A DNA stretch of 64,000 nt from Sphyrna mokarran (Eukaryota): NCBI GenBank assembly GCA_024679065.1, contig JAGIQG010000009.1, forward strand, positions 90,148,001-90,212,000. The letters run 5' to 3'. The position numbers were made by a program, and so were the translations under genes. This document shows, piece after piece, positions 630 through 48,394 of this stretch. Numbering within the stretch: position 1 is the stretch's first letter; every line of letters starts with the position of its first letter. Under the pieces are notes generated by a model. The model had not been told where the DNA came from. It searched no databases and worked only from the letters and a program-made list of their open reading frames with translations.

Positions 630-925
630 GGTGCAGCACGGTGGCACACTGGTTAACACTGCTGCCTCATAGCGCCAGGGACTCAGCTTTGATTCCTGGC
701 TTGGATGACTGTCTGTGCAGAGTCTGCACATACTCCTCATGTCTGTGTGGGCTTCATCTGGGTGCTCCGGTTTCCCCCCAGAGTCCGAAGGATGTGCATT
801 GGCCATTCTAAGTGTGCCCTCAACGTACCCAAACAGGCACCAGAGTGTAGCGACCGGGGGATTTTCACAGTAACTTCATTGCAGTGTTAATGTATGCCTA
901 TTGTGACACCAATAAATAAACTTAA
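630..925 (+). mobile_element. tRNA-derived V-SINE (HE1-like)
   Basis: tRNA-like head gcacggtggcacactggttaacactgctgcctca, V-domain gggtgctccggtttcc, and aataaataaa tail. Confidence 0.85.
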
Positions 926-1216
926 AAAACAGTTGAAATATGATATATTGCCTTTTATAAATTCAGGAAAACCTCCCAGCTCTCATAATCTGTGTCCCTT
1001 TCATCACCAGTAACGTGAGTTTAATGAATGAAACAGGAAGTTATTGCAGTGTTAGTTTGATTGAAAACTCTCCCAAAGAATATTTCTCTAAATGTTGTGG
1101 GTGTCTGAATTTGGAGACAGTCCAGGGTAAGTGTGAGAGCAGACAGGAACACACAAAACCCACAGCTTCTGTTTGGGCAGCTGGCATCCTGACTGTGGAC
1201 AGGTTCAATAGGCTGT

Positions 1217-1260
1217 TACCAATAGGAATTTAGATCACCAGACTGTCATCTGTTGCTGAG
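1217..1260 (-). promoter_or_regulatory. Distal MHC-II-type X-Y module 1
   Basis: CTCAGCAACAGATG, 20-nt spacer, CCTATTGGTA. GAAACAGGAAGT (IRF-Ets composite) at 1030-1041. Confidence 0.75.
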
Positions 1261-1804
1261 AGACATTCTCTCCTGGAGTTCACATTTTATCACAACACTT
1301 CTAAATAACTCAGTCCCTTTGCATCTCTCGGGTGAGTTGGTGATCCAGCTCCCTGAGCTTAGCTGTGGTGAAATACCTCAGTAAAACAGTTTGCGATATA
1401 TGGACACTAACCCCAGATACAGGGCTGTCCCATCACAGGTCAACACTCAGAGCATCTTCACAAGGAGAAACAGACCTGGACACAAAACAATCCCTTCCTG
1501 GCTGGAAATGGGGACAGTCTTTGCATCATTTTGACCGTTTAACTTCCAGCTGGACAGTAATCTGAGGGAAATTTTTATTTTAGTGCAGCCAGTCTGGTTT
1601 CAACAGGAAAAGAAAATTAATGCAGAAAATCAGAGCCTAATGGTTTGAACCAAGAATGTTATCAGATCTTAGTGTAGATAAGGACACTGCAATATTACAG
1701 TGCAGCAGAAGCCCATTCAGTCCATCATGTCTGCACTAGGTATCGAATGAGCAACTTATCTCCCAGTCTCCTGTATTCTCTCTGTAACAGGTGATGTTGT
1801 GGCA

Positions 1805-2160
1805 TTCATAGAATCCCAAAAGTGCAGAAGAAGCCATTCAGCCCATCAACTCAGCACCAACTCTCTAACAGAGTATATTATCCAGCTCTCTCCCCCTTCC
1901 TATCCCTATAATCCCACCTAATCTCATCTAATCTCAGCTAATCCCATCTAATCTCCACATATTTGGACACTAAGGGGCAATTTAGCATGGGCAATGAACC
2001 TAACTTTCACATCTTTGGACTGTGGGAGAAAACCAGAGCACCCAGAGGAAACCCATGCAGGCACAGGGAGAATATACAAACTCCGAAAAGACAGTCACCC
2101 AAGGCTGGAATTGAACCTAGTTTCCTGGAACTGTGAGGTAGCAGTGCTAACACTGGGCCA
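1805..2160 (-). mobile_element. HE1-like SINE with CR1-type tail
   Basis: Reverse-complement V-domain (gactgtgggagaaaaccagagcacccagaggaaaccc) and tRNA head. Confidence 0.8.
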
Positions 2161-2164
2161 CTCT

Positions 2165-3730
2165 ATCATCAATATTGTCACTGGACTAGTAATTCAGAGA
2201 CAGAGCAAGTCTCTAGGGACCTTGGTTTTGAAATTTTAATTCAGCAAAACAATAGGGAACTAAAAAGTCTGATAATGACTGTGAATCCATTGCTGACTGT
2301 TGTATAAATCCATCTGGTTCAATAATGTCCTTTTGGGGAAGAAAATCTGCCATACTAACCTGATCCACAACAATACAGTTGATCCTGAAGTGGCCACTCA
2401 GTTGTAACAAAGCATTATGAAGCTGAACAAGAATGGAACTGGATGGGCCACCTAGCACTAGATACTGGACTAAACTATAGCAAAATCAGTCCTGTCGACT
2501 CTGCAAAGCCTTACTAACATCTGGAGACTTGGGAGAGACATGGTACAGACTAGTCAAGCAACAGCCTGACATAGTCACACTGACTGAATCATGCCTCACA
2601 GATAATGTTTCAGACACTGCCAATACGATCCCTGGGCACATGTCCTGTTCCACTGTCAGGACAGACCCAGCAGAGGTGGCAGTACAGTGTGGTTTACAGT
2701 CAGGATAGAGTTGCCCTGGGAATCTTCAACATTGACCATGAAGTCTCGTGGCCCCAGATCAAACATGGATAAGGAAACTCCTGCTGATTACTACGTACTG
2801 CCCTCCTTCGGCTGATGAATCAGTACTTGTCCATCTTTAACACTGCATGGAGGAAGCACTGAGGGTGGCGAGGGTGCAGAATGTACTCTGGGTGGCTTGG
2901 TAGTACCACCACAGACTGAACTGGTTGGGTTCTAAAGGATATAGCTGCTAGACAAAGGTGGTGAGGGAAACAACAAGCGGGAGAAACATACTTGACCTCA
3001 TTTTCATCAACCTCCTGCTCATAGGTATATCTGCCCATGATAGTATTGGTAAAAGTGACCACTGCACAGTCTCTGTGCAGACGAAGACCCATCTTGACAT
3101 TGAGATTCCCAACCAATGGATTAGATCCAAGTTCTACAGTCCTTCCACATCCAGTCGGGAATGATGGTGAACAATTAAAAACTCACTGGAGGAGGAGGCT
3201 CCACAAATGTTCCCACCCTGAGTGATGGAGGAGCCAAGCACATCTCAACAAGCTTCAGCCAGAAGTACCAAGTGGATGATCCATCTTGGCCTCCTCCAGA
3301 GGTCCCCAGTATCTCAGATGCCAGACTCCAGTCAATTCAATTCATTTCATGTGATATCAAGAAATTGCTGAAGGCACTGGACGAGGCAAAGGCTGTTGGC
3401 CCTGACAATATTCCAGCAATTGTACTGAAGACTTGTGTTCCACAACTCGCCACTCCCCTTGCCAAGCTCTTCCAGTGCAGCTACAACACTGGCATCTAAC
3501 CAGAAATGTGGAACATTTTTCAGCTATGTCCTGTTCACAAGAAACAAACCCAGCCAGACCAAATACCGCCCCATCAGTCTATTTTCAATTATCAGTAAAA
3601 GGATAGAAGGGCCATCAACAATACTATCAAACAGTACTTACTCATTAATAACCTGCTTATGGATGGTCAGTGCTCTGCCAGGGTCAGTACTCTGCTCAGT
3701 ACTCAGGATTCTGCCAGGGTCACTCAGCTG
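2165..3730 (+). mobile_element. Degenerate CR1-clade LINE (APE and RT fragments) with a tRNA-like 5' head
   Basis: Motifs NILDLIF, GKSDH, KAVGPDNIPAIVLK, YRPISL. Confidence 0.75.
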
Positions 3731-4268
3731 TACTTTCTGTCAGTGCATGAACATTCTATAATGAGGAACACTTGCAGCAAATGGACAGATCCTCTCACAC
3801 CTGGTTTAGTTATCAGCATCACGAAAACAAATGTCATTGTCCAGATGTTACCATTCTACCATCGATCAACATTAAAATCAATTCCCACTGCAAAAGCTGC
3901 ACTTATTGCGTCCAAACTAAGAGAGTGTCAAACAAGAGCAACATGATTATAAACACCATCCAATTTTCTTTTGAAATTCTTTATTAGCTGGAATTCTCCA
4001 GCTGTTCATGGCCTACTGCTGCTACCAGTAAGAATTTAGCATTCAGCCAAATCTCCGTTCACTGCAGTGATTGGGAGAATCCTAGCTGTGGGTGAGGTTA
4101 GAGAATCTGGCCCATTGTTTTTGCTTTCACCATCCTTGTGGGCAGTGAGTTACAGATCATTATCATTAGCTCCATAAAAAATGTTCTTCCTCGTATTCCC
4201 TCTGCATCTCTTACCAAAACCATAAACCTATGTCTCTTCGTTTTTGTACTGTTTTGTCATACCAATGC

Positions 4269-5108
4269 TGTCATAAATACTTTAATCACAGAAAATTGTT
4301 CCTCTTCAAGGCCTAAGGACATTCTGGAAGAATTTGTGTTTTTAAAAGACTCCATTCTTAAAATGTTAGTTCAGGGGCTCTGGTTGCTGTTGCTGCTGGT
4401 AAAGACAGCATATTACATAAAAAGGTAATTAAGTAGTTTTAAAGAAGCTGGTTAGCTATTTACAGAAAGGTCACATGATAATTCATGGTTTTGAGTTAAA
4501 ATCATACCTGGAAAACTGTTTAAAAGCCGGTAGGCTGATTTGCTTTTGGGGTGATAGCGGATTGGTGGGGAGAGTAGGAAGGAAAAGGATCAATTGCTTG
4601 GATAAAGACATAAACAGTTCCTGAAGTTCTTGACCCAATCCAAAGATGGAAACAATGGAAGTTGCTCCAAACTCGCTCTACATTCTGAAATGGACCAACT
4701 GAAAAATTCTCTCGAAGGACATCTGAAAACTGGGCAAGAGCTAGTGACTATTTCTCAGACTAGTAAGTCAGCCAGACTCTATTTCAAGGACTTCATTCTT
4801 TTCCTTTGAACCATTAATTTTTAACAATTTGGTAGAATTCTTCTGTTGTATCTTTTTGTGTGTAAGTTATTTATAAAGAGTAATTACACTTTCACATTTC
4901 ATAATCTATGTACTAAGCTTTGCCCTTCTACTTGACAAGAATAGTTTTATAATAAACTAATAATTTTGTTGTTTATTGAAGAGATTAATGGGTGAAGCAC
5001 ATACTTAGTCACGTAGCTGGCTGAGAAAATAATTTAAATAGAGGTTGTGACCCATGGTGTAGTGGAAGTAGAGACAGATAGGGCACTCTCTCCATCCTGG
5101 TTGTAATA
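4269..5108 (+). mobile_element. Probable solo LTR inserted into a CR1 3' tail
   Basis: About 840-bp non-coding block starting TGT and ending GTAATA, with internal AATAAA. The interrupted minus-strand CR1 tail resumes at 5109. Confidence 0.5.
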
Positions 5109-5259
5109 ATGGGAACAGTTTTCTTTATCTCTCTTATCTAAATTTCTCTTGATCTTGTATTGCCTGTAAAATCTCTTCTCAATATCCTTTGCCCCAAAGG
5201 GAACAATGCCTGCTTCTCCAATTTAATCTTGCAGCTAAAGTCCCTCATCTTTGGATTAA

Positions 5260-5700
5260 AACAAGGTCAACAACCCCAGAGGTCTTGGAGTGTGCTGTCA
5301 CCATCAGTGTACACACATTGCTAAGTCAATGATGTCTGCACTGGCTCAGCCACATAGATTGGACAGCAGCTGTATATCCAAAGATCTTCTGCAGACTGCA
5401 CTGACCACTGGATGCTGGGCATCTGTATCTCTGCAACAAGGACAGCCATAAGCAGCATATGATGATCGCAGACATTGCCAACTGACAACTGAGAGACAGT
5501 CACCAACATCTGTGATCTCTGGAAGCTGACCTCTTGGAATGGCTTTGTCAGAGGTGAGCAGAAATAGATATCTCGTACACAGAAAAAGAGGACTCAGAGA
5601 AAACAGAGGCAGGTGAATACTGAACTCTCTCAGCCCATTGTCTTCCTTTGCAGTAAATACAGTACAGACTGCCATATCAGAGTGGGCTCTGCTGTCACAC
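5260..5700 (+). mobile_element. RTE-like LINE 3' fragment (decayed)
   Basis: Decayed remnants resembling the LRWLGH...IPKDLL and GRPxLRYKD motifs. Confidence 0.45.
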
Positions 5701-6303
5701 TAGGTGATGCTTAACACAAAGTTAACCATCATCTCATGAGATGCAAGGATAATAATTAATCATGATTCGACAAAATGTGTAATAAGGTCAGCAGCTACAT
5801 AATCCTGGGAAAGCCCAAACTGAGTGAACTGTTTATTGCAAAGTATGTGCTGCTTTATAGAACTGTCAATGACCCTTTCCATCACTTTGTTGATGATCAA
5901 GAGTAGACTGTGGGGTGGTTATTGCCTGGATTGGTTCCTTTCTGTTTCTTATATACAGGACATAGCTGGTCCATGTTGTAATTCTACTGAAATAGCTTGA
6001 CTAGTGCAGCTGTAAGTTCTGGAGAACAAATAATATTGTCAGAACCCATTGCCTTTGCAGTGCTTAGTCCCCCAGCATATTGTTATGGACAGATGCATCT
6101 GCGCCAAGTTGATAGAAGACTGAAGGATTTAACAGAGGGGAAATGCAAATTGGTGCCAATTACCAGCCATTTAGAGTAGAGTTGGGGAAGATCTTACAAT
6201 CAATAATCTGGGGATAATAAAAGATGCCATTCATGTACCCTACAGTGTTTGTGCTAATAATGAAATTTTTTGTATTGAAATATAACCTCAGAAAAACATT
6301 CTG

Positions 6304-6347
6304 CTTAGCAACAGATGACATGTCCCATTTTTAAAATTTCATTGGCT
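6304..6347 (+). promoter_or_regulatory. Distal MHC-II-type X-Y module 2
   Basis: CTTAGCAACAGATG, 20-nt spacer, TTCATTGGCT. NF-kB consensus GGGGATTTTCC at 6444-6454. Confidence 0.75.
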
Positions 6348-6549
6348 AAGTATATTTGTCTTTATAACATATTAACAACACGACAGATTAAGCAATAATC
6401 TGTAAATCAATAGCAGTAAAATGTTGACTTGCTGTTTGTAGTTGGGGATTTTCCACTCATGCCCTTCCCCCTCGCTGCAAACTGGAACCCAAGAGAAACT
6501 CTTTGCAGCTCTGTGTTTCTTAATCTAGAATAACCAATTCTCAACAATA

Positions 6550-6780
6550 AACTCCACTTCCTCCACCTGTTCTCTGGAACAAGTTCCCTTTGAACACCAC
6601 TCACTTGCTCCAAAAGAAAGGAGTATGTTCTGTGTGTACTTGCATGGCTCCAAGCAACACCAGCTTTTTTGTGGAACATATGGAACATTCCTTATTTACT
6701 AAGATTCCCATTCTCATCTCTTTTTTCCGATACATGGATGATTGTATTGCTGCCACTTCCTGTTCTCACTGTACACAAAC
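6550..6780 (+). mobile_element. Penelope-like RT fragment
   Basis: ORF contains FFRYMDDCIAA and a decayed KGVAMG..APS motif. Confidence 0.6.
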
Positions 6781-7511
6781 CGCTCAGTCCCTTGAGCCTG
6801 CTTCGCCATTTAATGAGATCATGGTTGATCTGACTGTAACTTCAACTCCACATTCCCGTCTACGCCGATAATCTATCGCCCCCCTCCCCTTCTTGTTCAC
6901 CCAAAAATCTATCTAGCTCCAATCCTGTCTGTGGGTTTCCATTCACTGATACAACTGGTTTGATTTGAGTCCATCAAGTTTGTTCTGCATATGATCATGT
7001 CTAAATCTTTTGCTCACCTCCAATTTTCCACTCTCTCCATTTTCTTTAACTTACAGAGAGATTAAAATTCTCTCTATTGCACTCTTGATATACTGATGAT
7101 GGAACATCCACAACTCTTAACATAAAGAATCCCAGAAGTACACAGACCTATGAGAAAAGTAATTTCTCAGTTGTAGATAATCAACTCCTGATCCTGAGAC
7201 TGTGTCCCTGTATTCTAAATTCTCCAGACAAGGGAAAGCCTTGTGTCTATTCTTCTGCTTTCCACTCTGGTAGAAACTAGAATGGACCCTGGTCTTTATC
7301 AACCCTCGAATTACAGGAAACCTCTGCCTTCTGTCTCCAGACCTTTTTTATGAAAATATGATAGTTTTGCAGCAGTCATTCCAATTTCATCTCTATTTGA
7401 AAGGATATTAATGAAGAGCACAGCCGCCATCTTATTCCATTCCAGTGTCCCTGCTGGATGTATTTCCATCGACTAATGCAACTGAGGCTTCAGTTTGAGG
7501 CCTCAAACTGG

Positions 7512-9950
7512 CGTCACCACTTCAGATGTCAGAGCAGCTTTCTTGAAGGTCAACGCATGGAAAGCAACCGGCCCAGATGGGGTACATGGACATTCATTTA
7601 GATCCTCGCAGATCAGCTGGAGAGGGTATTCAGATCTCTTCAACCTCTCTTTACAATAATCTGAGGCTCCTATCTGCTTCAACAAGATGACTATCATGCT
7701 TGGTCAACCCATGGAAAGCAACTGGCCTAAATGGAATACCTGAACATGGACTCAGATCCTTGTGGTTCAGTTGCGGATATATTCACAGACATCTTCAACC
7801 TCTCTTTACAATAATCTGAGGTCTCTATATGCTTCAAATGATGACCATCATCCCGGTAACTAAGATAACCAAGCAGCGTGCCCTAATGACTATCAGCTGG
7901 TGACTCTGACATCCATCATTATGAAGTGCTTTGAAAGGTTAGTCACTGCATGAATCAATTCCAGCCTCCCAGACTACCTGGATCCACTTTGATTTGCCTA
8001 TTGCCGCAACAGGCCCACAGCAGATGCCATTTCCCTGGCCCTGCACTCAACCCTGGAACACCGAGATAACAAGGACACCTGTGCCAGACTCCTATTTATT
8101 GACTACAGCTCAGCCTTCAACCCCGGTGAGTTTCCCACAAAATTCATTTCCAAACTCTATGGCTTGGGCCTCAGCACCTTCCTCTGTGACTGGATCCTGA
8201 ACTTCCTAACTCACAATCAGTAAGGATGGTAACAACACCTCCTCCATGATCATCTTCAACACCAGTGCCTCACAAGGTTGTGTTCTCAGCCTCCTACTAT
8301 ACTCCTTATCACCTACGACAGTGTAGCCAAATTCTCCTCTAATTCGATTTTCAAGTTTGCTGATAACACCACCATAGCGGGTCAGATCTCAAACAATAAC
8401 GAATCAGGATATAGGAATGAGATAGAGAATTTGGTGATCTGGTACGTCAACAATAATCTCCCTCTCAATGTCAACAAAATGAAGGAGATTGTCATTGAAT
8501 TCAGGAAGCATAAAAGAGAACATACTCCTGCCTACATCAATAGGGACAAAATAGAAAGGACCGAGAGCTTCAAGTTTTTAGGTGTCCAGATCATGAACAA
8601 CCTGTCCTGGTTCCCCCATGCCGACACTATAGTTAAAAAAGCCCACCAATGTCTCTACTTTCTCAGAAGATGAAGGAAATTTGGCAAGTCAGCTATGACT
8701 CTCACCAACTTTTACAGATGCACCATAGAAAGCATTCTTTCTGGTTGTATCACAGATTGGTATGGCTCCTGTCCTGCCTAAGACCGCAAGGAACTACAAA
8801 TTGTCAGTGAATGTAGCCCAATCCATCACGCAAATCAGCCTCCCATCCATTGATTCTATCTACACTCCTCGCTGCCTTAGCGAAACAGCCAGCATAATTA
8901 AGGACCCCACACACTCCAGACATTCTCTCTTCCACCATCTTCCTTCAGGAGAAAGATACAGAAGTCTGAGGTCATGTACCAACCGACTCAAGAACAGCTT
9001 CTCCCCTGCTGCTGTCAGACTTTTGAAGGGGTTTACCTTGCATTAAGTTGATCTTTCTCTGCACTCCAGCTATGATTGTAACACTACATTCTGCACTCTA
9101 TCCTTTCAAAGAACAAAGAACAAAACAACACGGGAAACAGTCCTTCAGCCCAACGAGCCCGCGCCACCACCTCGATGTTCCCACTTCTATCCATGATCCC
9201 TGTCCATGTTTATAGATCTATGCATTGGAACCAAATTTGCGAGACAATTTAGTCAGAAATTGTTTTGCCAATCAGCCTAAGAGCACATCTTTGGGGTGTG
9301 GGAGGAAACTGGAACCCTTGGAGAAAACCCACGCAAGCACAGGGAGAATGTGCAAACTCCCACAGACACAGGCCCAAATCCATGTATCTGCACAGCACAG
9401 CGATAGTCACTGAGCTGTCGTGTTGCCCATCAAATGGTCCAGGTCAAGCGTACACTAACGACGTGAAGCACTAGGATACTCTCAAAAAATCCAAGAGCAG
9501 CCCTCTCATGACCCATCGCGTGTATGCCCCTTGTCAGACAACAAGGCTGACTGAAGTACCTGTAGGATAAAACAGAAACACGTCAATATCATTGACAATT
9601 TACACACTTCCCAGGGAACTCCAAGGCTCATGATCCCTATTTTAAATCAGTTTTCTATATCCCTCCATTCCATTCTGTTCATGTGCCCATCTAAGTATTT
9701 CTTAAATAACTCCAGAGTATCTGCCTCCACCACTTTACTTGGCAGTGCATTCCATACCCCCACCACCCTCTGTGTGAAAAAACTCCCTCTAGCATCCAAA
9801 TTATACCTTACCCCCCTCACCCTAAGCCCGTGACCCCTCGTGCTATTCAAGCCCATCCTTCTCTATGAACAGTGTGTTTTGTCTGTATAACGTGCAAGAA
9901 ATAGTTATGAATGTTAATACATGTGGCAATAATAAATCAAATCAAATCAA
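7512..9950 (+). mobile_element. 5'-truncated Rex/Babar-clade LINE, with a ~155-bp tandem duplication at its 5' end and a nested CR1 at ~9108-9857
   Basis: Motifs KFADNTTI, KKAHQCLYFLRR and TNRLKNSFSPAAVRLL; aataaa followed by an (atcaa)n tail. Confidence 0.85.
9108..9857 (-). mobile_element. CR1 3' end with SINE-containing 3' UTR, nested in the Rex/Babar LINE
   Basis: C-terminal TRGHGLRVRG..FFTQRVVGVWNALP; 3' UTR shared with copies at 45.4, 48.7 and 62.3 kb. Confidence 0.88.
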
Positions 9951-9955
9951 AGGCT

Positions 9956-10000
9956 CTTAGCAACAGATAATAAATTGATATTGGAATGATCTCATTGGTT
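9956..10000 (+). promoter_or_regulatory. Distal MHC-II-type X-Y module 3 (degenerate)
   Basis: CTTAGCAACAGATA, 21-nt spacer, CTCATTGGTT. EICE GGAAGTGAAA on the minus strand at 10201-10210. Confidence 0.6.
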
Positions 10001-10329
10001 AGCTGGGATAGTGATGAACCAGATACTGGTTACAGGTGGAATGGTATCATTTCCAAATGGAAACTGCTGGTTCATAATTAGTTCCCTTTCTAATAATGAA
10101 TCTATTACTTTCTTTCATACTAAGAAGAATAAACACATTCCCATGGGGACATGTGATATTATTTGGAATAAACTGGGCTGAAGTTCCTATTTTATCTCAT
10201 TTTCACTTCCCCATGCCAGAGAAAGAGGATTTGAAATCAGAACAACATTGGTGTGTGTATGGGGGAAGGGATGTATTTGCAAACCAGCTACTGCAGTTAA
10301 AGCCCATTTTCAGGATTGGGTCAAGTTGC

Positions 10330-28000: not shown

Positions 28001-31000
28001 GTTTGACAAGCTATTTGGGATCTAGCTAAACATTGCAAAGACATTCAGGACCTCCAAGAGGCAACTGGATAGATACATGAATACACAGGGAATAGAGGGA
28101 TATGGATCATGCAGAGGCAAATATTAGATGAGGGGTATCTGTCAGCATGGACTTGGTGGGCTGAAGGGCCTCTTCCTGTGCTGTTCTTTGATGGTTTGAA
28201 TTAACCTATCTTTTATAATTGAAATATTAGCACTGCATTAACTTGTGATTACATATTCACCTCCAGGTGAATTTGTAAATATCCAGTGATTCCACCAACT
28301 ACTTCAGAAAGTGAAGGAAGGAATTTCCTGTCTCTGGTTTTGCCTTCTATAGAAAAGATTCCCAGTGAAATTGCTCTAGTTTTGATTAGTTTCTTCCCTC
28401 ACTGCACCAAGACAAACTAGCTGACTCCCAATACAATATTGCTACTACAAGCAAGGTTAACATGTCAATTTTAGGTTAGAAGCCAAGAAGGCTTAATATT
28501 TGGATGTTCCCAGCCATCCTGATTTTTGTAGATCCTTTTATGAAATCAGACTACCTAGAGTCACATCTGAGGGTACAGGTTTTGTGCTCAGACTGAACAG
28601 AATCTTACCTTTAGCATTCCTCAGCTTCATAATCACTCCAGCCAGCAGGATGATCAGTCCAATTCCAAATCCCACAGCTCCAACAATAATCTTGTGTTTC
28701 TCTGATTTAGTTGTGCTTCCCACTTCTGTACAAGTGAAAAATCCAGGTGAGAGAACACTGATGCATTTTGACACAAGAGCTTGAGGGATTATCAACATGT
28801 GAAAGGAGTTGAAAAAACTTAAAAGGTTCCAACTGGTGTTCTGTAGCACATTGATGCACTGTGAAGGCCCCATAAGTCTGCCACAAAAGTTTAATGTTAA
28901 TGTACATTAAATCTAATTGGTTTTCAGCTGTGGCTGGCATTACCAAATCTTGCTGAACCTCAAGTCTCCATGTGTGCTGGTTAGGAATAGGCTACACATG
29001 CATTTTGGCCCTGATGTAAAAAGATCAGAAGCATGTGTGTCTTTTCCAGCAGGCACAGTTTGTATTACCAACATTAAACATTGAGTACCTTGTGTAGCCC
29101 TTGCCTGGCTGATGTGCACAGGAGATCCCAGGTTCTTTGGGAATTGGAGATGCCAACCATGAAATTGAAGACAAAGACCCCATGCACTTGCACAAAAATG
29201 GAGGCAGAAAGCTGAGAAGTAAAAAAATTCCCAATGTGGGAAGACAGATCAAAAAGGAAAATCTTAAGTTGCTTCTTTAACTTAAATTTGAATATTAAAA
29301 TGGTGACATGTGCTTAGAAGGTTTAGGGATAAAAGGCTTGAGGGTAGTTCAGTTGGTGTGCAGTGACAAAGCAGGATAAGTGGTAATCTATTGCAAATAA
29401 AGCAAGAAAACCAAGTTTGTCACATGGTTTCCAATACATAGGATTCTTTCTCCAAGATGTGACATCTGTAAAAGGAGACTACTAGAGCTAATGTTGAGTA
29501 GTCTGGTATAAGTGTTAGCATCTGAAGACCACTATTGGACTTGCTCATCCTCCAGAAAAGTGCAAATTTGGGAAAGATGATACAATAGAAAAGTGATTAG
29601 AAGCACACCAAAATTGAACAGGTAGAAAACCCAAAGATTAGGGTAAAAATGGACAAACCAGAACCCTTGACAAGGCTCCTCACTGGAGAAAATTTACAGC
29701 AAGGCACAGCAAATTACAAAGTGATGCCAGATAGTGGTTCCTCAGGGATCTGTGCTGAGGTTGTCCTTTGTTCATGTTTGCAGCAATAACTGCTAGAACT
29801 GGCAGATTAGCCTGAAATGTAAACTATTTTCCTCCCCACAGATTGACACCTGCTCAATGTTTCCAGAATTTTGCTTCATGTTGTACTACATAATGTTTCT
29901 TACCCCAGTCTGTGTTCTTGGGTTCATTCAGGCTGCTGTGTTCCACACGACAGGTATATTTATCTCCAGACACAGGTTGATATTGGAGGAGATCCTGAAC
30001 CTGATAGGTCCAGTCACCATCTGATAACAGGGCAGTGTTGATGACACCATTAGGAACTGGCACTCCATTTTTCAACCATGTGACCTCAATCTCAGGAGGA
30101 TAAAATCCAGTAACATGACACAAGAGCAGGGCTGACTGTCCAGAATGTGGTGTTGTTTTAGGTTGGACAGTGACTGTTGGTTTGACTGGAATAGAAACAG
30201 AAGAATTAATTTAGAAATAAAGATCATAGTATAATGGCAGTGTCTGATTTTCCTCTGGCCTTATTACTATTTGTAGAGTCAGGAAGACCTTCAGTCAAGT
30301 CCTTGTCTACAAGTTTTAGCCTTCCAATCAGGCAAGACTGGTAAGTCTTGAGTTGGAATTGGAACAGATCCAAGAAGAGTGGGAACATCTTTAAAGTGTT
30401 GGCTTCAGTAAGATTCATGAAAGTGAAGTGAGGTATCAGGCCTCCTATTGGTCCATTTGTCATCATGCCAAATGGCTCAAACTTGATTAAGAATCTGCAG
30501 TGTAAACTGGAAGTGGGACTAGGTGACACATGAAACAGGGACCAAGGAGTAATTTGATATTCAGCTGGTTTCACCACAAAATAGCTGGGCACTAGTTCAT
30601 CATGCCTTTCATTAAAAATGAAAAGTGCAATAGCCTAATGATACATTTCAGATTAAGTTCAATTTTTGAAGGGGGAATATGACAGTGACCAAGATTCTAG
30701 ATTTAGAACATAGAACACTACAACACAGAACAGGCCCTTTGGCCTTTGATGTTGTGCCAACCAATATAAAAAGCAATGCCCCTCCAAACTAAACTATTCC
30801 CTCTTCCATATACTTATCAACTAACCGCAAATGCCACCAAACTTGGCACAACTGCTGCAGGCAGGGCATTCCACTCCCAAACCACCCTTTGGGTAAAGAA
30901 CCTACCTCTGATATCCGTCCTATAACTATCACACCTTAATTTAAAGCTGTGTCCCCTCGTGCTAGCTTTCTCCATCCTAGGAAAAAGGCTATCACTGTCC

Positions 31001-34000: not shown

Positions 34001-37000
34001 TGTTGAGACAAAATCTTCACTAATGAAGTTCTCAAGCTAACTGCCCAGATACTTGTCCCTTCCCTTCCACTGAAGGGCATCTCTGGCAGGAGACCTTGAG
34101 GCCAGGCTTTCAGGAGTCACCCCACTGACCCCTGTGTGGATCAGTTACACATCTGTCAAGACAACCTGACCAAGGATAGGCATCACCTACACCATCCACT
34201 AGCAGATAGTTACCTCAGTGAAATGTTAGGAGTCAGGATTCTGGGGAAACTCAGGTGAACACCATCCAGCTGCTAATGCTCATCAGATGGAAGCTGAGAC
34301 AGACATGAGATCTGCCAGAGCAAGGAGACAGAGCCCCAGCCAGATGCCAGGCCTCTGGGATCTGTTATCCTGAAGCTGCTGGAATAGAGGGATTGCCAAG
34401 AGGGGCTGTCAGCAACATTGTAGCAACTGCAAGATTTGAGGAGAGTTCCACAGCCTTCAGTAAAAGATGCCAGCAGAGTACATCCAAGGACAGTATCTGA
34501 AGTTGAAAGCATGGGCAAGAAAAAGTCACTGAGGATGTAGGAGCATGCTCAAGACATGATAATGACTACAGGTTTACCTAATCAGAGGGCATTTGAGTGA
34601 CTTGAGTTGGGCTGAGATTTAGAGACCATAATTGAAGGCTTGGATATCATGGGCAGATGTAGTTGGGCTTCCAAGGCTGGTAGAATCAGGTGATTGAGGC
34701 CTCTAGAGCTCATTCCAGCTGAGCCTCTGTCCTATGGAGGGTATCAGGAGCACTACAGGATGAAGGACTGGAGCCAATGCCAGGAGCTTCCTACCCAAGC
34801 CATCTCAGCTTTTCCATGTACCCATTTCCTACACTGGTGAATCATGGGCAGCAGCCTGATCAGGATGGTACAGCTACATCTGTGACACTGGCAAGTTACC
34901 TGTGGTCCAAGTGGTGTCCCCTCCTTAAGAAAAGCCCAAAGGCATCTAAGTCATGGGGTGCAGAAAACAGCTGACCACCTCTACCTCAGACACATCCTGG
35001 GAAGTCACCTAGATGTAGCAATAGGTGATGCTTGATTGAAAAGTTGTAGGGTCACCAAGAGGGAAGTAATTGCAGTTGGGAGTAAATCAAATATTCTTGC
35101 ACCCTATAGTTGTGACTCTGCTGTCTGTAATCCATCTCACTGGGTAGTCAGTTCAAGAATTCCTGCAAGACAGCCTTGCTGACTGCCAGAGTGTCCTTCA
35201 GCCCACCAAGTCTGCACTGACTATACCCACACCAGAGTCATGCAGTTCCCAGTGCATGCACTTGTGTCAGGTGGCTATTGTGGTATTTCAAGTGCTCATC
35301 CAAAAAATAGTATTAGGATACAAGGTCACTGGCCCCCAATGCTGATGCAAGATTCTGGACCAAGCTCTTCTGCCCCATTCTCTGCCAGCACCCCTAGCAT
35401 TGCAGGGCTTGTAATCCCAATACAGCCTGCAAAGGGTAGCATTCTCAGATTGAAACAGGTCTAGGTTCCACCACCCTCCAACAATGCCTAATTATTGGGC
35501 CCACATTGAGGCCTGGGGTACCACTGTGTACCTGAGCACTGGTGTGGAAATCAGAAGTAGGAGTCAGGCTTGTTTCACACTAGTGTAGCAACACTGCAAT
35601 GATTAGTGGGACACTACTTATTTAAGGGCCTTTGTCATCTGCCTGCTCCATTTTTGGTTTCCTTAGCCTCCACATTCTCCTGCCCTGACCCCTTCTCAAG
35701 GGATGTTTGTAGAAGTCTCCTTGCTGCTGTGCCAGGTTGTGGCATTCAGCAGACCATGATGCAGGAGACCCTGGGGACTGTACTGGAGGGTACTACCAGA
35801 GCAGCTTAGACAGCAGAATAGCAGCTTGTTATTGGAAGAATGACATTGAGGAAAGGGCCTTTGTCCTGGACTGCCTTCCAATCTCCACTACCAGACCATC
35901 TCAGATTTTGTAGCATGTGATGGTATAGCAACCACAATTTTCATAATGCATCCCTTGTAATGCATGATCTATTTGAGGTTGACTATGAAATAGAGGCTAT
36001 AAATTTGTTTCCTGGAAAGCTGTGCTAGAATAGTTTGGATGGTCAAGTATTCAGAATCTGTTCACTGAAGAGGCGAGTTGACCCATCAACTCAACTGACT
36101 GAAAGCCTGCCTAATTCCCATAACCCTGCAGATTTACCATGCTAATCCACTTAACATACATATTTTTGTACTATGGGAGGAAACTGGAGCAAACCCCACA
36201 CGGTGAGAACTCTACACATTCATCCAAAGCCAGAACCAGAATCAAACCTGGGTCCCAGGCATTGAGGTAAAAGTGCAAATCACTAACCCTAACCCAGTGG
36301 TACCCCAGGCCTCAGTGGGCCCAAAAAGCTCATCTCTGCTTCACATTCCTCATATACCATTGGAGGAAGGAGCCCAAATAACCATCAGTTCCAGAATTGA
36401 GACTGTGCACTGGTGCTGTTCATATTCCTCATGTGGCCCTAATGGGACTGGTGTCTCCTGAAACAGTGACAGGAGCCAGTGCCTCAAGGCACAGGACTAT
36501 ACTGAAGATGGAGTGAGACTATTTGGGTAAGAGTTTACTGAGCATTCCTCCCACACAGCTGTACCTGCCTCTGCTTACAGAGAAATGCCAGTTATTCCTG
36601 GAAAGAAACTCAGGCTTCAGGTATTCTTCACCGTGTTGTATTTTTAACCTCACTGACTAGAGGAAAACCCTCAGCAGGAGGGGGGAGTAGAATTGCTGCC
36701 ATTCTGTGTCCAGATGTGTTAAGGGGGGGGAGTGTGTTTGGGAGGAGGGTGGGTGATTTTGCCCAGAGCGGGATTCAGGAAGCTCAGCCCCTCAGAGACA
36801 GGGAGCTCCCAGAGAGAGAGTCCCGGGGACTCAGCAGCTCCGGGCACAGGACGATCCCAGTACAGGCCGCTGGTGACATTTAATCCCCCCCCCCCCGGGG
36901 CTCTCACCTCTCCGGGACAGAACACTTTCGTCGATGGGAACGTTGGTTTCACACACGGTGATGCCCTCCTGGTACCGCGCTTCCGCCCGATCATTCCATG

Positions 37001-40000
37001 TCTTCACATTCCCCTCCATCCCGCTCTTCACCGCGATGTACTTCCTCTGGTTAAAGTCGAAATACGCGACCAGCTCTTGATCATAGACATACTCCTCAAT
37101 ATAGGTCCAGCTCCTGGTGTCGTTAAAATCACATCCGTGAATGTAGTAAAAGGAGTGAGCCCCTGTGAGAGAGAGACTGAGTTACTGTCTGACAGAGAGA
37201 GAGAGCCCAGAGACCCGGGAAAGGGGATCTTCCCCACCCACCCAGTCCCATCACAACATGGGGAAGGGGTGCAGCTCTCAGACCCCCCCAAACTCCGGGA
37301 AAACCCCACATTGTCTCAATAATCTCCAGGAAATCACACCCTGACCCTGTGTAGGGACAAAAATCTGGGCACGCGGTTAAAATCCAACAGGTTTAACTTG
37401 TGTTGATGTCTTATTGTATCCACCCCAATCCAACACCGACACCTCCGCCTTGTGTAGAGAGGGTCAGGATAGCTGTGGGGTTACCCCTTACCCCAGAGAT
37501 TCAACACACTGGAAGTTAATCCCATTCCTGGGGATAATAACCCATGGGAATTAAGGTGACAGACACTAAGTCATCCATGATAGATGTAGCTGTAATCTCC
37601 CAAAGAGAGGGAGATTGAAACTGATCGGAGGACAGTCCCAGTGAGTGCAGAACATTACAGGATGGTGGTCAGTGAAAAAGATAAAATCTCCATAATCCCA
37701 CAAACATTTACTCTCCCTTAAGATGCAGAGAAGTCAGGAGGAGGAACAGAACAGGACTTCAGTTCTGGCCAGATTTAAACAAGGTGAGCACTAGTTCAGC
37801 ACTCAACATGTGCAGAGAGGAAGGGAGATCATATTTCTGGCTTGGGTTACTGGAGTCTGCACATTGTGGGAGGAAATTTGGGCAGTCTGAAGCATTCATT
37901 AGGTATATTAGTGTACTTGAACAAGCAGCAGAGTATAATAATCAGGGGGAATTGCCAGTTAAGCCGACATGATAATAAAAATAAGTCAAGGGAGCAGGAA
38001 ATGGATCTCATTGATGAAATGAGTTCAGAGCAGGAGAAGAAATGGGTGGGAATAAAGACCAAAGAATTAGTGAGGAGCAGGAAAAACCAATGCTCAACAT
38101 GGAGTTCGTCTGAAATACAGCAAGGAAAAACTAACGGAGACAGTATCTAATGAAACTATCTGCTGCTCAGCCATAGCACAGGTCCCCAAAAGCAGTTAGA
38201 GGTCAAACCAATTCTACTGTAGAGTTTTTACAATATATTAAAGTCTGAAAGATGACAAATCAAAGTGTAGTGATAGTCACTTTCTCCAAAGATAAAGATG
38301 CATTGAGATGTTTCATACTGTGAAACATCTCTATCTTTGGAGAAAGTGGTGGTCAGTGAAAAAGTTTCTTTCACATACCACCATCCTGTAATGTTCTTCA
38401 AATGACCAAACTACCAGGTACCTCAAGATTCTTCAACATTAATATATTAGGATGAAGCAGTCTGAGGTTTAGCTGGTTGCCAGCCCCTAGTGGCCTTTTA
38501 CCATTGCACCTTGGCAGCAGCTACCCCAAACATTTAGTGCTTCCTTCAGCATGTAATTCTGGGCTTTGTAACATGTCATCTTGCAAGATTCAGTTTCAGA
38601 CAGACCAAAGAGCATCTTTTTACTGATTTGATGACCCTCCAGTAGCAGATATAATAAAGTCTGTCCCTTGGACTTGGGACAGAATAGACAAGTTGAGTAA
38701 TCACCAGTAACCATTGCCATAAACTGTTCCTTGGGGTGCAATATTCTAGTGTTGCTAATCATTGTAGAATATGGGCAAGTAAGCAATCGGAGTATAACTG
38801 AAAAAACAAAAGATTATGACCCTGCATTGCAAACCTGTGGGCAGATCCTCCTTTTCATTCTGTCATCCTGGCCTCACCTTTCCATGCCTTATCACTGCTT
38901 TAAGGCCATTATGTTTCCAGTTTTGAAATAATGGAAATTAACCATAATATTCACTCCATGGCATTGATAGATCTGGAAGCATTTCCACCATCTGTAGCTG
39001 TACATCTAATGTTCTATTTGTAAAAGAGTGCTCAGTGCAGTGATCAATTTTTATGCCTTTCATAACAGCTGCATGAATATATAAATTTGCAGCTCAGCTC
39101 ACTGGCTGGAAGTGAATGTAAACCTTTCCACATTCTGTACCTGGAGAGATGGAACCATAGAAACAGACTATTCAGCCCAATGGACTACATAAATGCACAA
39201 AGGCAAGCCATTCATTCAAATCCCATCTTGCAAATCCCTGCACTTCAGATGCAGATCCAGGTGCTTTTCAAATGAGTTTAGTCTATCTATAGTCTATCTA
39301 TAATCTATCATGTGTATTACTATACATGTAAAGTAATGTTTGTGTACTTTACAGAAAACAGTGCAGAGAAAGACCACCTTAATGCAAGATAGAACTGTTC
39401 AAAAGTCTGATGGAAACAGGGAAACTGAGTCAGTTGGTATGTGTCCTCAGACTTGAATCTTTGATTGACAGTGGCATATATGTTTGGGGTGCCTGGGGTT
39501 TGATTATGCTGGTTACTTTACTAAGGCAGCAGGAAGCATAGACAGTCACTGGGAGGCTGGTTTGCATGATGGACTGGCTTCATTCACAACCCTTAGTTTA
39601 TTGAAGTCTTGGACAAACCAGGAGCCATACCAAGCTTATGATGCAACCAGAAAGAATGCTTGCTATTGAGCATCTGTAAAGTTGGAGTCATGCCAAATGA
39701 CCTTAATCTCCAGAGAAAGTAAAAGTGTCAGTGGGTTTTAACTATAGTGCCAGTATGGAGAGAACAGGATAGATTGTTGATTTGGACATCTGAAAACTTA
39801 AATCTCAAACACTTCTACTTCATCCCCATTGATGGAAACAGGGGCATACCTTCTATCATACTGAGGCTGATTAATGTCTCCAATGTAACAAAATTTGTCT
39901 TTGCACCAGTTTCTGTACTGTCATATCATTGTTAGAGATCCAACCTACTAGGATGGTGGCATCAACAAACTTGATTAGACTTGGAGAATTTGGCCAGTCA

Positions 40001-47434: not shown

Positions 47435-47828
47435 TTTAAATAGAGATACTGACCAATCACAACGGAACATAAAGATTGACCAATCACATAAAAATACACT
47501 GACCAATAAGCAGCTGGAAAATCACCCAATCAACTCCATATATCGGGGAACAGGGACCAATCAGCATCAAGAACACGTGTAGCGGGTCAGAGGAGCAAAT
47601 CAGAGCTGGGAACGGGTAGCCAATCAAAAGTGAAATAGCGAGGAAATAAACTAATCATAGGCGAGCATGTGTGGTCACCTGGTCTCTGTTTGATTATGAA
47701 CCAATCAGAACAGAGAATGGTTCCGCTCGTTGGCTCTGTAGATAAAGGAACCAACCAGAGTCGGGTCAGGCAAATCATCATCAGTATCATCAGTTGCTAG
47801 GTGGAATTGGGCGATTCATTTCAATTTC
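47435..47828 (-). promoter_or_regulatory. Class II beta promoter region: TATA-like box (47435-47442), CCAAT array, X box (47788-47801), IRF-type motifs
   Basis: TATTTAAA about 60 nt upstream of the ATG. CCAAT at 47453, 47480, 47503, 47526, 47557, 47620 and 47701. X1 box CCTAGCAACTGATG. GAAATTGAAA at 47819-47828. Confidence 0.8.
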
Positions 47829-48394
47829 TATGTAGGCTAGTCAGTGGGCGACAGCAATGTTTTCACTGTAGGAAGCTGCATTTGGAAGGGGAAACAATCA
47901 GAGGGATTCACTCATTCATTCAAAGTTAGGCCCTGTTGAAGTGTGTGCTCCTGCACAGTGGCTGGTATGCTGAAAGCTGTGACTCCTCGTCAGTGTTAGC
48001 TTCTGAGAATTCTTCGGGGCTGGAAAAACTCAAGTCTTGACTGGAGGACGCTCTGGATTGGTTCTCAGATGTGCTTTCAAAAAAAAAGATTTCAGGGATC
48101 TTAAGAAGCAGGAAGCATAACTCACATAAGTGTACTGGATCCTTATTTAGATTATCAGCACTCGCTCACAGTCAACACAGAGTGCTCAGTCTTCCCTGAC
48201 CAGTTGGAGGGCTCTTTCTTCAAAGTCAGTCGGGATTTATATCCTTAGCATTCTGCTGTCAGGGACAGATAGCTTGAGTGTCAAAGATATGTACGTTAGG
48301 TCAGATTAGCTATGGTAAAGTATTCAGGGTAATGGATATAGGGTGGAGAGCCTGAGTAGGACTTACAGTGAGTAGGTGTAAATTTCATAGGTCA

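What the first reader, a model, noticed from the sequence alone, without database searches (positions are those of the whole stretch)
1030..10212. Three orphan MHC-II X-Y modules 3' of the class II beta gene: candidate shark class II locus control region
Seen: three RFX-type X1 boxes, each followed by an inverted CCAAT/Y box, at 1217-1260 (-), 6304-6347 (+) and 9956-10000 (+), with spacers of 20, 20 and 21 nt. None is followed by a recognisable leader exon. Each lies in a non-repetitive island beside haematopoietic motifs (IRF-Ets composite at 1030, kB at 6444, YY1 gccgccatctt at 7423, EICE at 10201). Established: the mammalian class II enhanceosome (RFX, CREB, NF-Y, CIITA) needs X and Y at about 19-20 bp, and distal S'-Y' copies form the HLA-DRA/H2-Ea LCR. 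Inference: this is a CIITA-dependent long-range enhancer cluster in a cartilaginous fish, which would date that architecture to the jawed-vertebrate ancestor. I know of no description of it in sharks, but could not search.
Basis: partly seen in the sequence, partly recalled or inferred. Interest (0 to 1): 0.88.

Follow-up and report, generated by a model that had tools for sequence, protein, structure and literature searches.

The report
Orphan MHC-II X-Y modules in shark
Three near-perfect copies of the paired DNA switch that turns on MHC class II genes in mammals sit in gene-free, single-copy DNA downstream of a shark class II beta gene, which suggests, but does not prove, that remote switches of this kind are very old.

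Summary
X1 core plus inverted CCAAT at the class II distance occurs exactly three times in 64 kb, at the stated places, against 0.03 expected. Relaxing the X box to three mismatches adds none.

- **Geometry:** the X-to-Y offset is 34, 34 and 35 nt. The beta gene's own promoter shows the same offset once its 9-bp duplication is discounted.
- **Sequence context:** flanks and spacers of the three modules are unalignable. This argues for constraint on the boxes rather than recent copying.
- **Copy number:** modules 1 and 2 lie in single-copy islands between SINE and LINE debris. All three lie outside in-window repeats.
- **Coding content:** no class II, Ig or other coding exon follows them.
- **Accessory motifs:** the kB and EICE sites occur at chance frequency. 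The site at 1030 is not a canonical EICE.

My best reading is distal RFX/NF-Y (CIITA-type) enhancer modules like the human S'-Y'/XL elements. That makes this a new member of a known kind, in a cartilaginous fish. "Locus control region" is untested.

No S box was found, module 3 lacks an X2-like half-site, and there are no usable expression or deep-conservation data. The scan noted similar clusters elsewhere in this genome; I did not check those notes.

The parts
1217..1260 (-). Module 1. It has a pyrimidine tract, the X1 box (CTCAGCAACAGATG), a TGAC half-site abutting X1 (X2-like), and a Y box (ATTGG) at offset 34.
   Evidence: single-copy depth (bin 1201-1400: X1 38.7, X3 21.8, X9 23.8)
6304..6347 (+). 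Module 2. It has a pyrimidine tract, the X1 box (CTTAGCAACAGATG), a TGAC half-site, and a Y box at offset 34. This is the best match, with 13 of 13 in the X probe.
   Evidence: single-copy depth (bins 6201-6800: X1 22-40)
9956..10000 (+). Module 3. It has the X1 box (CTTAGCAACAGATA), no X2-like half-site, and two ATTGG boxes at offsets 21 and 35.
   Evidence: outside in-window repeats; not covered
1001..1600 (.). Single-copy island that holds module 1, between a SINE (641-797, and very high depth to about 1000) and SINE/repeat DNA from about 1600-1800.
   Evidence: Contigs of two other organisms cover it: X3 811 nt over 1016-1839 with 47 differences and 19 gaps; X9 444 nt over 901-1335 with 26 differences.
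6201..6800 (.). Single-copy island that holds module 2 and the kB-like site at 6445-6454.
47751..47800 (-). The beta gene's own X-Y module. The X box is CCTAGCAACTGATGA. There is a 9-bp tandem duplication, and the Y position reads GTTGG at offset 43 (34 + 9).
47435..47709 (-). Array of seven ATTGG boxes followed by TATTTAAA, in front of the beta gene leader.
47265..47378 (-). Beta gene leader exon, with ATG at 47378.
   Evidence: tblastn with shark beta chains, best E 9e-15
36900..37166 (-). Beta-1 exon.
29902..30198 (-). Beta-2 (C1-set) exon.
28577..28735 (-). Connecting-peptide and transmembrane exon. A weak candidate cytoplasmic exon lies at 26375-26407 (E 0.2-0.3).

Best explanation
The three sites are real MHC class II-type composite modules. 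Each has an RFX-type X1 box with its 5' pyrimidine tract. Modules 1 and 2 also carry a CRE-like half-site. Each has an NF-Y Y box in the fixed order, orientation and distance used by this species' own class II promoter.

They sit in single-copy intergenic DNA 16-27 kb beyond the 3' end of a class II beta gene and have no exon of their own. The boxes and their spacing are intact while everything around and between them is unalignable, so they appear to be kept by selection.

I infer that they work like the human distal S'-Y'/XL elements. In that model an RFX/NF-Y (and perhaps CREB) platform recruits the shark CIITA orthologue in antigen-presenting cells. The platform acts independently of orientation on the beta promoter, and possibly on other class II genes of the cluster, by looping.

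Shown here: presence, non-randomness, geometry, single-copy status and absence of exons. Inferred: factor binding, CIITA dependence, enhancer activity and target gene.
For: - **Enrichment:** 3 observed against 0.03 expected. No weaker copies appear elsewhere in the 64 kb, even at 3 mismatches.
- **Geometry:** the offset of 34/34/35 equals the gene's own module (43 minus the 9-bp duplication).
- **Pyrimidine tract:** one lies 5' of every X box (printout). PMC2278383 (passage) describes this tract for human modules.
- **Flanks:** the 300 nt on each side show no significant similarity between modules (z between -1.4 and 1.7). The spacer at offsets 14-31 is only 29-35% identical, while the X region is 68-77% identical.
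- **Copy number:** single-copy depth at modules 1 and 2.
- **No exons:** blastp of the gene's own exon ORFs against 1273 ORFs. Pfam on 150 of the 154 ORFs of 55 aa or more in 1-28.2 kb found only RVT_1 in 2 members plus three chance-level families. tblastn with 32 fish beta chains hit only the four known exons.
- **Human precedent:** distal S-Y modules bind RFX and CIITA and work in both orientations (PMC1802633, passages and Table 1). About 40 non-promoter X or X-Y boxes were reported in the human class II region (PMC2292219, passage).
- **Trans factor:** a CIITA orthologue is reported in whale shark (PMC8455134, passage).
- **Scan notes:** unchecked notes report a similar orphan cluster behind another beta gene 199 kb away (s1-886596) and modules upstream of CD74 (s1-886783).
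Against: - No S/W box could be recognised. The best pair, m1-m2, shares 16 of 32 nt in -40..-8, and there is no common motif.
- Module 3 has no X2-like half-site.
- The one run guessed to be RNA (X24, 98 million letters, tissue unknown) has depth 0 over 1201-1600 and 6201-6800. So there is no sign of extragenic transcripts, although no positive control was laid for that run.
- Conservation could not be judged. The two other organisms seen are only about 6-8% diverged. The difference table showed 40 of 963 places, so their state inside the modules is unknown.
- The background is one 64-kb window, not the genome.
- Reports in teleosts hold that IFN-gamma induction of class II can run through IRF1 and ISRE without the enhanceosome (PMC7573153, passages). 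The mammalian mechanism therefore cannot simply be assumed for fish.
Confidence: 0.55

Rival explanations
1. They are proximal promoters of transcripts that I could not see. These could be non-coding or very short first exons, or, for module 1 on the minus strand, a far-upstream first exon of a gene lying left of the window. In that case the X-Y modules drive those transcripts directly.
For: - The geometry is that of a promoter module.
- Module 1 points out of the window, with only 1.2 kb left to inspect.
- An ATG-led 48-codon frame starts 70 nt after the X box of module 1, and an 81-codon frame starts 137 nt after that of module 3.
- The human DRA distal module was reported to produce low levels of transcripts (PMC2292219, passage citing Masternak 2003).
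Against: - No Pfam family beyond RVT_1 and chance-level hits was found in 150 ORFs. No class II or Ig similarity was found either.
- No good splice donor follows the frames downstream of modules 1 and 3, judged by my own reading.
- There is no TATA-like box within 290 nt of any module.
- X24 contigs are absent over modules 1 and 2 (a weak result).
- The nearest class II alpha exon noted by the scan is 102 kb to the left (s1-886520, unchecked).
Confidence: 0.2
2. They are fossils. On this reading they are the promoters of class II genes that were duplicated with the locus and later deleted or decayed, and they have no present function.
For: - Shark class II loci are multigene and duplicated: three beta and four alpha loci lie within about 1 Mb in the catshark (PMC9992475, abstract and section 13).
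- The scan notes several class II genes within a few hundred kb (unchecked).
- The modules have promoter geometry but no gene.
Against: - Neutral decay that erased all flank and spacer similarity should also have hit the 13-nt X box, which retains 12-13 of 13 in all three, and the ATTGG pentamer, which retains 5 of 5.
- The orphan modules are closer to consensus than the live gene's own module, which carries a duplication and reads GTTGG.
- No pseudo-exon remnants were found.
Confidence: 0.15
3. They are chance matches, or sequences carried by a repeat family.
For: - The first 12 kb is rich in SINE and LINE fragments, and a repeat ends 97 nt before module 3.
- An RT-like frame (YMDD) lies 250 nt after module 2.
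Against: - 0 of 100 shuffles reach 3 matches.
- Depth is at single-copy level at modules 1 and 2 at 80% likeness in three DNA-type runs.
- The modules share nothing but the boxes.
Confidence: 0.04

Closest known systems
Human and mouse distal S'-Y' enhancers of the MHC class II locus and of Ii/CD74 (Krawczyk et al. 2004; DRA/Ea upstream module, Masternak et al. 2003). I know these only through passages and reference lists of PMC1802633, PMC2278383, PMC2292219 and PMC7866136; the originals are not held.
   Same: - They are non-promoter copies of the X-Y part of the class II module, in either orientation.
- They are scattered kilobases from class II genes, several per locus.
- They share the tight order and spacing of X and Y.
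   Different: - No S box was recognised here.
- The position is 3' of a beta gene rather than upstream.
- The host is a cartilaginous fish.
- No binding or activity data exist.
- The live gene's proximal module is the degenerate one.
XL (X box-like) elements of the human class II region (Gomez et al. 2005; XL9, Majumder et al. 2008, PMC2292219)
   Same: They are intergenic X or X-Y look-alikes within the class II region, some of which have regulatory activity.
   Different: XL9 acts through a neighbouring CTCF site as an insulator and looping anchor. I did not test for CTCF sites. The shark sites are full X-Y pairs with exact spacing, not X boxes alone.
Proximal W/S-X-X2-Y promoter module of class II, Ii, DM and DO genes
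   Same: They share the X1 core, the 5' pyrimidine tract, a half-CRE in two of the three modules, the Y box, and the same distance as this shark's own beta promoter.
   Different: No gene follows. There is no S box, and no TATA box or leader exon nearby.

Membership tests
MHC class II S-X-X2-Y (W/SXY) enhanceosome module | X1 box (RFX site) with a pyrimidine-rich 5' edge | tested here: met
   The exact 10-mer AGCAACAGAT is present in all three modules, with 12-13 of 13 for the longer probe. Pyrimidine tracts are visible. The consensus itself is recalled and matches the gene's own promoter box.
MHC class II S-X-X2-Y (W/SXY) enhanceosome module | X2 box (CRE-like) abutting X1 | tested here: inconclusive
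   Modules 1 and 2 read GATGACAG and GATGACAT, which contain a TGAC half-site. Module 3 reads GATAATAA, with none. I applied no profile or binding test.
MHC class II S-X-X2-Y (W/SXY) enhanceosome module | Y box (inverted CCAAT) in fixed orientation and distance from X | tested here: met
   Offsets are 34, 34 and 35. The own promoter shows 43, which equals 34 plus the 9-bp duplication.
MHC class II S-X-X2-Y (W/SXY) enhanceosome module | S/W box at a fixed distance upstream of X | tested here: inconclusive
   No shared motif was found. Identity in -40..-8 is 31-50% between pairs, and flank alignments are not significant. The shark S box, if one exists, is not defined, and the published S-Y profile sits in a supplement that I could not open.
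MHC class II S-X-X2-Y (W/SXY) enhanceosome module | Occupancy by RFX5/RFXAP/RFXANK, CREB and NF-Y, and recruitment of CIITA | not testable with these tools
   This needs ChIP or CUT&Tag in shark antigen-presenting cells, or reporter assays in CIITA- or RFX5-deficient cells.
Distal S'-Y'/XL enhancers | Located in the class II region but not at a gene's promoter | tested here: met
   No exon or domain follows within the window. The modules lie 16-27 kb 3' of the beta gene.
Distal S'-Y'/XL enhancers | Enhancer activity dependent on RFX and CIITA | not testable with these tools
   No functional data are available.
Locus control region | Position-independent, copy-number-dependent expression in transgenes; hypersensitive, acetylated chromatin; extragenic transcripts | not testable with these tools
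   The only hint available is that run X24 (guessed to be RNA) has depth 0 over modules 1 and 2. This is uninformative without a positive control.

The most novel reading that the evidence does not exclude
Sharks may run their class II genes largely through clusters of remote X-Y modules rather than through the proximal one. In this window the live beta promoter has a damaged, displaced X-Y module about 385 nt from the start site, padded by a CCAAT array, while three pristine modules sit 16-27 kb downstream. According to unchecked scan notes, the same layout recurs behind a second beta gene and in front of CD74. If the notes hold, a multi-module, CIITA/RFX-dependent long-range enhancer system was already present in the common ancestor of jawed vertebrates. 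The mammalian promoter-centred arrangement would then be the derived state.
Probability: 0.25. Interest if true: 0.78.

Novelty: new member of a known kind. Interest (0 to 1): 0.55.

Why it matters
Whether the RFX/NF-Y/CIITA enhanceosome logic of class II control is ancestral to jawed vertebrates is not settled. SXY motifs are said to be conserved across vertebrates. Teleost work, however, reports IFN-gamma induction of class II through IRF1 and ISRE without the enhanceosome (PMC7573153, passages).

Canonical X-Y pairs with exact spacing in a shark would put the cis-logic at the base of the jawed vertebrates. Here they occur both at a live promoter and at three orphan sites that appear to be under constraint. 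They also give short, precisely defined elements that can be tested in existing human CIITA- or RFX5-deficient cell lines and in shark spleen chromatin.

My searches found nothing in print on shark class II cis-elements:
- 0 papers.
- 1 review, with no shark cis-element data.
- 95 papers hold both terms and 20 were listed; none of the listed titles is on this topic.
- nothing relevant.

The library lacks most subscription journals, including much of the older shark MHC literature, so this absence is weak.

Tried and rejected
Tried without result:
- **tblastx repeat mapping.** Its summed statistics linked unrelated pieces, so I did not use it.
- **Homologue search with the beta-1 ORF.** There were 3 candidates, and none scored.
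- **Findings search by sequence with module 2.** It was blank.
- **Rfam and tRNA scans of 1-28 kb.** The only match was a 5S-like element at 16975-17083, with nothing near the modules.
- **ATTGG clustering after module 3.** There are 4 boxes in 400 nt, the maximum on the + strand, but about 1.3 such windows are expected by chance. I rejected it as evidence of a promoter array.
- **Similarity between modules 1 and 3 downstream of Y.** The MAFFT alignment suggested it, but it is not significant (z 0.9), so I rejected it.
- **Cross-species test.** The collections open to the search for related loci are viral, metagenomic and prokaryotic, so I did not use them.
- **Class II alpha chains.** I could not obtain any to search for alpha exons directly. 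Pfam on the ORFs stood in for that search.
- **Supplements (closed).** Supplementary Fig. S3 of PMC9992475 (alpha/beta layout in catshark) and Supplementary Fig. 1A of PMC1802633 (the S-Y profile) may bear on the neighbouring-gene question and on a proper profile score.

Rows dropped: 40 used 150 of the 154 ORFs of 55 aa or more in 1-28.2 kb.


Full report
**What is in the window.** The only recognisable gene is an MHC class II beta gene on the minus strand.
- The leader has its ATG at 47378.
- The beta-1 exon lies at about 37166-36900, beta-2 at 30198-29902, and the connecting-peptide/transmembrane exon at 28735-28577. A weak candidate cytoplasmic exon lies at 26407-26375.
- The closest named proteins are two Mustelus asterias beta chains. 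Identity is 84/78% for the leader, 68/58% for beta-1, 84/87.5% for beta-2 and 81% for the TM exon. A Scyliorhinus canicula chain comes next, with beta-2 at 86%.
- The source is therefore a carcharhiniform-like shark. Run and organism names were coded.
- The finding's region, 1030-10212, lies 16-27 kb beyond the 3' end of this gene.

**The observation.** The sequences are as described.
- The exact 10-mer AGCAACAGAT occurs three times in 64 kb, at the three modules. Fourteen sites match with up to one mismatch, against 6.95 expected. Leaving out the three modules and the gene's own promoter box leaves 10, which is not enriched.
- The core followed by ATTGG within 15-35 nt occurs three times against 0.03 expected, and 0 of 100 shuffles reached 3.
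- I relaxed a 13-nt X probe to 3 mismatches and required ATTGG at offset 31-39. The result was the same three sites and nothing else. In 60 simulations the mean was 0.37 and the maximum 2.
- There is no continuum of weaker look-alikes. The modules are a sharply separate class of sequence.

**Geometry.** ATTGG starts 34, 34 and 35 nt after the A of AGCAAC.
- The gene's own promoter has its X box at 47798 and GTTGG at offset 43, with a 9-bp tandem duplication in between. Removing one copy gives offset 34. This confirms the scan's companion note s1-887248.
- An offset of 34 is therefore this species' class II X-Y distance, and the orphan modules keep it.
- I recall that the human DRA module has about the same distance. 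No call checked this.
- Each X box is preceded by a pyrimidine-rich tract, a feature described for human modules (PMC2278383, passage).
- Modules 1 and 2 carry a TGAC half-site where X2 should be. Module 3 does not.
- I found no S box. Identity in -40..-8 is at most 16 of 32 (m1-m2), and no motif is shared by all three.

**Not repeats, not recent copies.** In-window blastn places repeats at 641-797, 1806-1861, 1966-2161, 3257-3671, 5781-5969, 7548-7851, 8085-9105 and 9108-9859. All three modules lie outside them.
- I laid contigs of four runs on 801-6800 at 80% likeness.
- Depth was about 39 in run X1, 22-26 in X3 and 11-24 in X9 over 1001-1600. It was 22-40, 24-30 and 9-17 over 6201-6800.
- Depth was 10^3 to 2.3x10^6 in the SINE and LINE bins.
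- Modules 1 and 2 are therefore single-copy in three data sets. Module 3 was outside the 6000 letters allowed.
- The 300-nt flanks of the modules show no significant similarity to each other (z from -1.4 to 1.7).
- The X-Y spacer is 29-35% identical between modules, which is close to random. The X region is 68-77% identical.
- Intact boxes at a fixed distance inside unalignable DNA argue for selection on the boxes. They argue against recent duplication, gene conversion or a transposon origin.

**Orphan status.**
- The gene's own beta-1, beta-2 and TM ORFs were run by blastp against all 1273 stop-to-stop ORFs of 30 aa or more. The beta-1 and beta-2 ORFs found only themselves at E below 0.4. The TM ORF had one weak match, 35% over 49 aa at E 0.005, at 34276-34548 inside the gene's own intron. 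One ORF of 1273 carries the C1-set signature, and it is beta-2 itself.
- Pfam on 150 of the 154 ORFs of 55 aa or more in 1-28.2 kb gave RVT_1 in 2 members. It gave three single-member families at E 0.0012-0.0062, and no MHC or Ig family.
- tblastn with 32 shark, ray, coelacanth and gar beta chains hit only the known exons at E of 1e-3 or better.
- Rfam and tRNA scans found nothing near the modules.
- Short ATG-led frames follow modules 1 and 3. They resemble nothing, and by my reading they lack good splice donors.
- A non-coding or very short first exon cannot be excluded. Module 1 points out of the window, with only 1.2 kb left to inspect.

**Expression and conservation: weak data.**
- All 24 runs found were Logan contigs.
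- The one run guessed to be RNA from the likely source organism (X24, 98 million letters) has depth 0 over 1201-1600 and 6201-6800. It covers only repeats. No positive-control stretch was laid for it, so this says little.
- Contigs of two other coded organisms cover the module 1 island. X3 has 811 nt over 1016-1839 with 47 differences and 19 gaps. X9 has 444 nt over 901-1335 with 26 differences. Depth shows that they also cover the module 2 island.
- At roughly 6-8% divergence a 44-nt element would carry only about three neutral changes.
- The tool listed 40 of 963 differing places. None of the listed places falls inside a module, but nothing can be concluded from that.
- Run X1's contig over 907-1660 has 5 differences, all listed and all outside module 1. 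Again there is no power.

**Accessory motifs.**
- EICE (GGAAnnGAAA) occurs 5 times against 3.36 expected, and kB (GGGRNWYYCC) 8 times against 9.1.
- The sites near modules 2 and 3 are therefore what chance gives.
- The '1030 IRF-Ets composite' has the two halves in the opposite order and is not's list.
- The YY1-like 11-mer at 7423 is rarer (2 against 0.46 at up to 1 mismatch), but it lies 1.1 kb from module 2.

**Interpretation.** The best-supported reading is that these are functional RFX/NF-Y docking modules of the class II type, acting at a distance.
- Human distal S-Y modules in the class II locus and at Ii bind RFX and CIITA and enhance in either orientation (PMC1802633, passages and Table 1; PMC7866136, passage).
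- About 40 non-promoter X or X-Y boxes were reported in the human class II region. The module upstream of DRA/Ea was proposed as an LCR (PMC2292219, passage).
- S-Y profile matches proved highly predictive of real binding (PMC1802633, passages).
- A CIITA orthologue is reported in whale shark (PMC8455134, passage).
- Against simple transfer of the mammalian model: no S box was found, module 3 has no X2, and teleost data point to class II induction independent of the enhanceosome (PMC7573153, passages).
- 'LCR' is a functional claim that nothing here addresses.
- The rivals are promoters of unseen transcripts, functionless fossils of lost class II genes, and chance or repeats. I weighted them 0.2, 0.15 and 0.04. 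The fossil reading is weakened because the orphan boxes are better preserved than the live gene's own.

**Context from the scan (unchecked leads, not evidence).** The notes report the following:
- a similar orphan X-Y cluster behind another beta gene, 199 kb beyond the window (s1-886596)
- four S-X-Y-like modules upstream of CD74 (s1-886783)
- a class II promoter with a displaced X-Y module and an 11-copy CCAAT array, 206 kb before the window (s1-886848)
- a class II alpha-1 exon 102 kb before the window (s1-886520)

The scan has therefore seen this kind of thing before on other DNA of the same genome. If these notes are verified, recurrence at paralogous and functionally linked loci would be the strongest argument for function.

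**Verdict.** This is a new member of a known kind, distal class II X-Y modules, in a cartilaginous fish. Interest is moderate. It is not a new mechanism, but it offers a clean, testable handle on how old the class II enhanceosome logic and its long-range use are.

Noticed in passing
window 47435-47830 (-): The live beta promoter is unusual. Its X box lies about 420 nt upstream of the ATG. The Y position of its own module reads GTTGG after a 9-bp duplication. Seven ATTGG boxes at 47705, 47624, 47561, 47530, 47507, 47484 and 47457 fill the gap to TATTTAAA. This is the densest ATTGG cluster on either strand of the window, with 7 in 400 nt.
   Followed up: partly
window 47819-47828 (-): An ISRE core, GAAATTGAAA, lies 21-30 nt upstream of the promoter X box, where mammals have the S box. 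Only 3 such cores occur in the whole window, so the position is unlikely to be chance. This fits the teleost reports of IRF1/ISRE control of class II.
   Followed up: partly
window ~18000-36000: There is an extreme CpG desert. It holds 14 CpG in about 18 kb, and the longest CpG-free run is 5560 nt (19064-24624). It covers the 3' half of the beta gene. Young LINE copies elsewhere in the window keep 30-46 CpG per 2 kb.
   Followed up: no
window 16975-17083 (-): A full-length 5S rRNA match (91.9 bits) directly abuts a LINE 3'-tail frame at 16543-16977 (-). It looks like a 5S-derived SINE or a chimeric retrocopy.
   Followed up: no
window 51958-52482: A tandem array of a 31/59-nt unit, with 17 or 8.6 copies and 81-84% matches. 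It reads as long Ser/Pro/Leu-rich frames on the + strand.
   Followed up: no
window 41400-44800 (-): A nearly full LINE with endonuclease and reverse-transcriptase frames lies inside intron 1 of the beta gene. This helps explain the 10-kb distance between the leader and the beta-1 exon.
   Followed up: no
window 9108-9859 and 48653-49400: A 750-nt repeat copy ending 97 nt before module 3 is 89% identical to a copy just upstream of the beta promoter, and 83% identical to one at 45431-46153. It is a young repeat family and does not include the module.
   Followed up: partly
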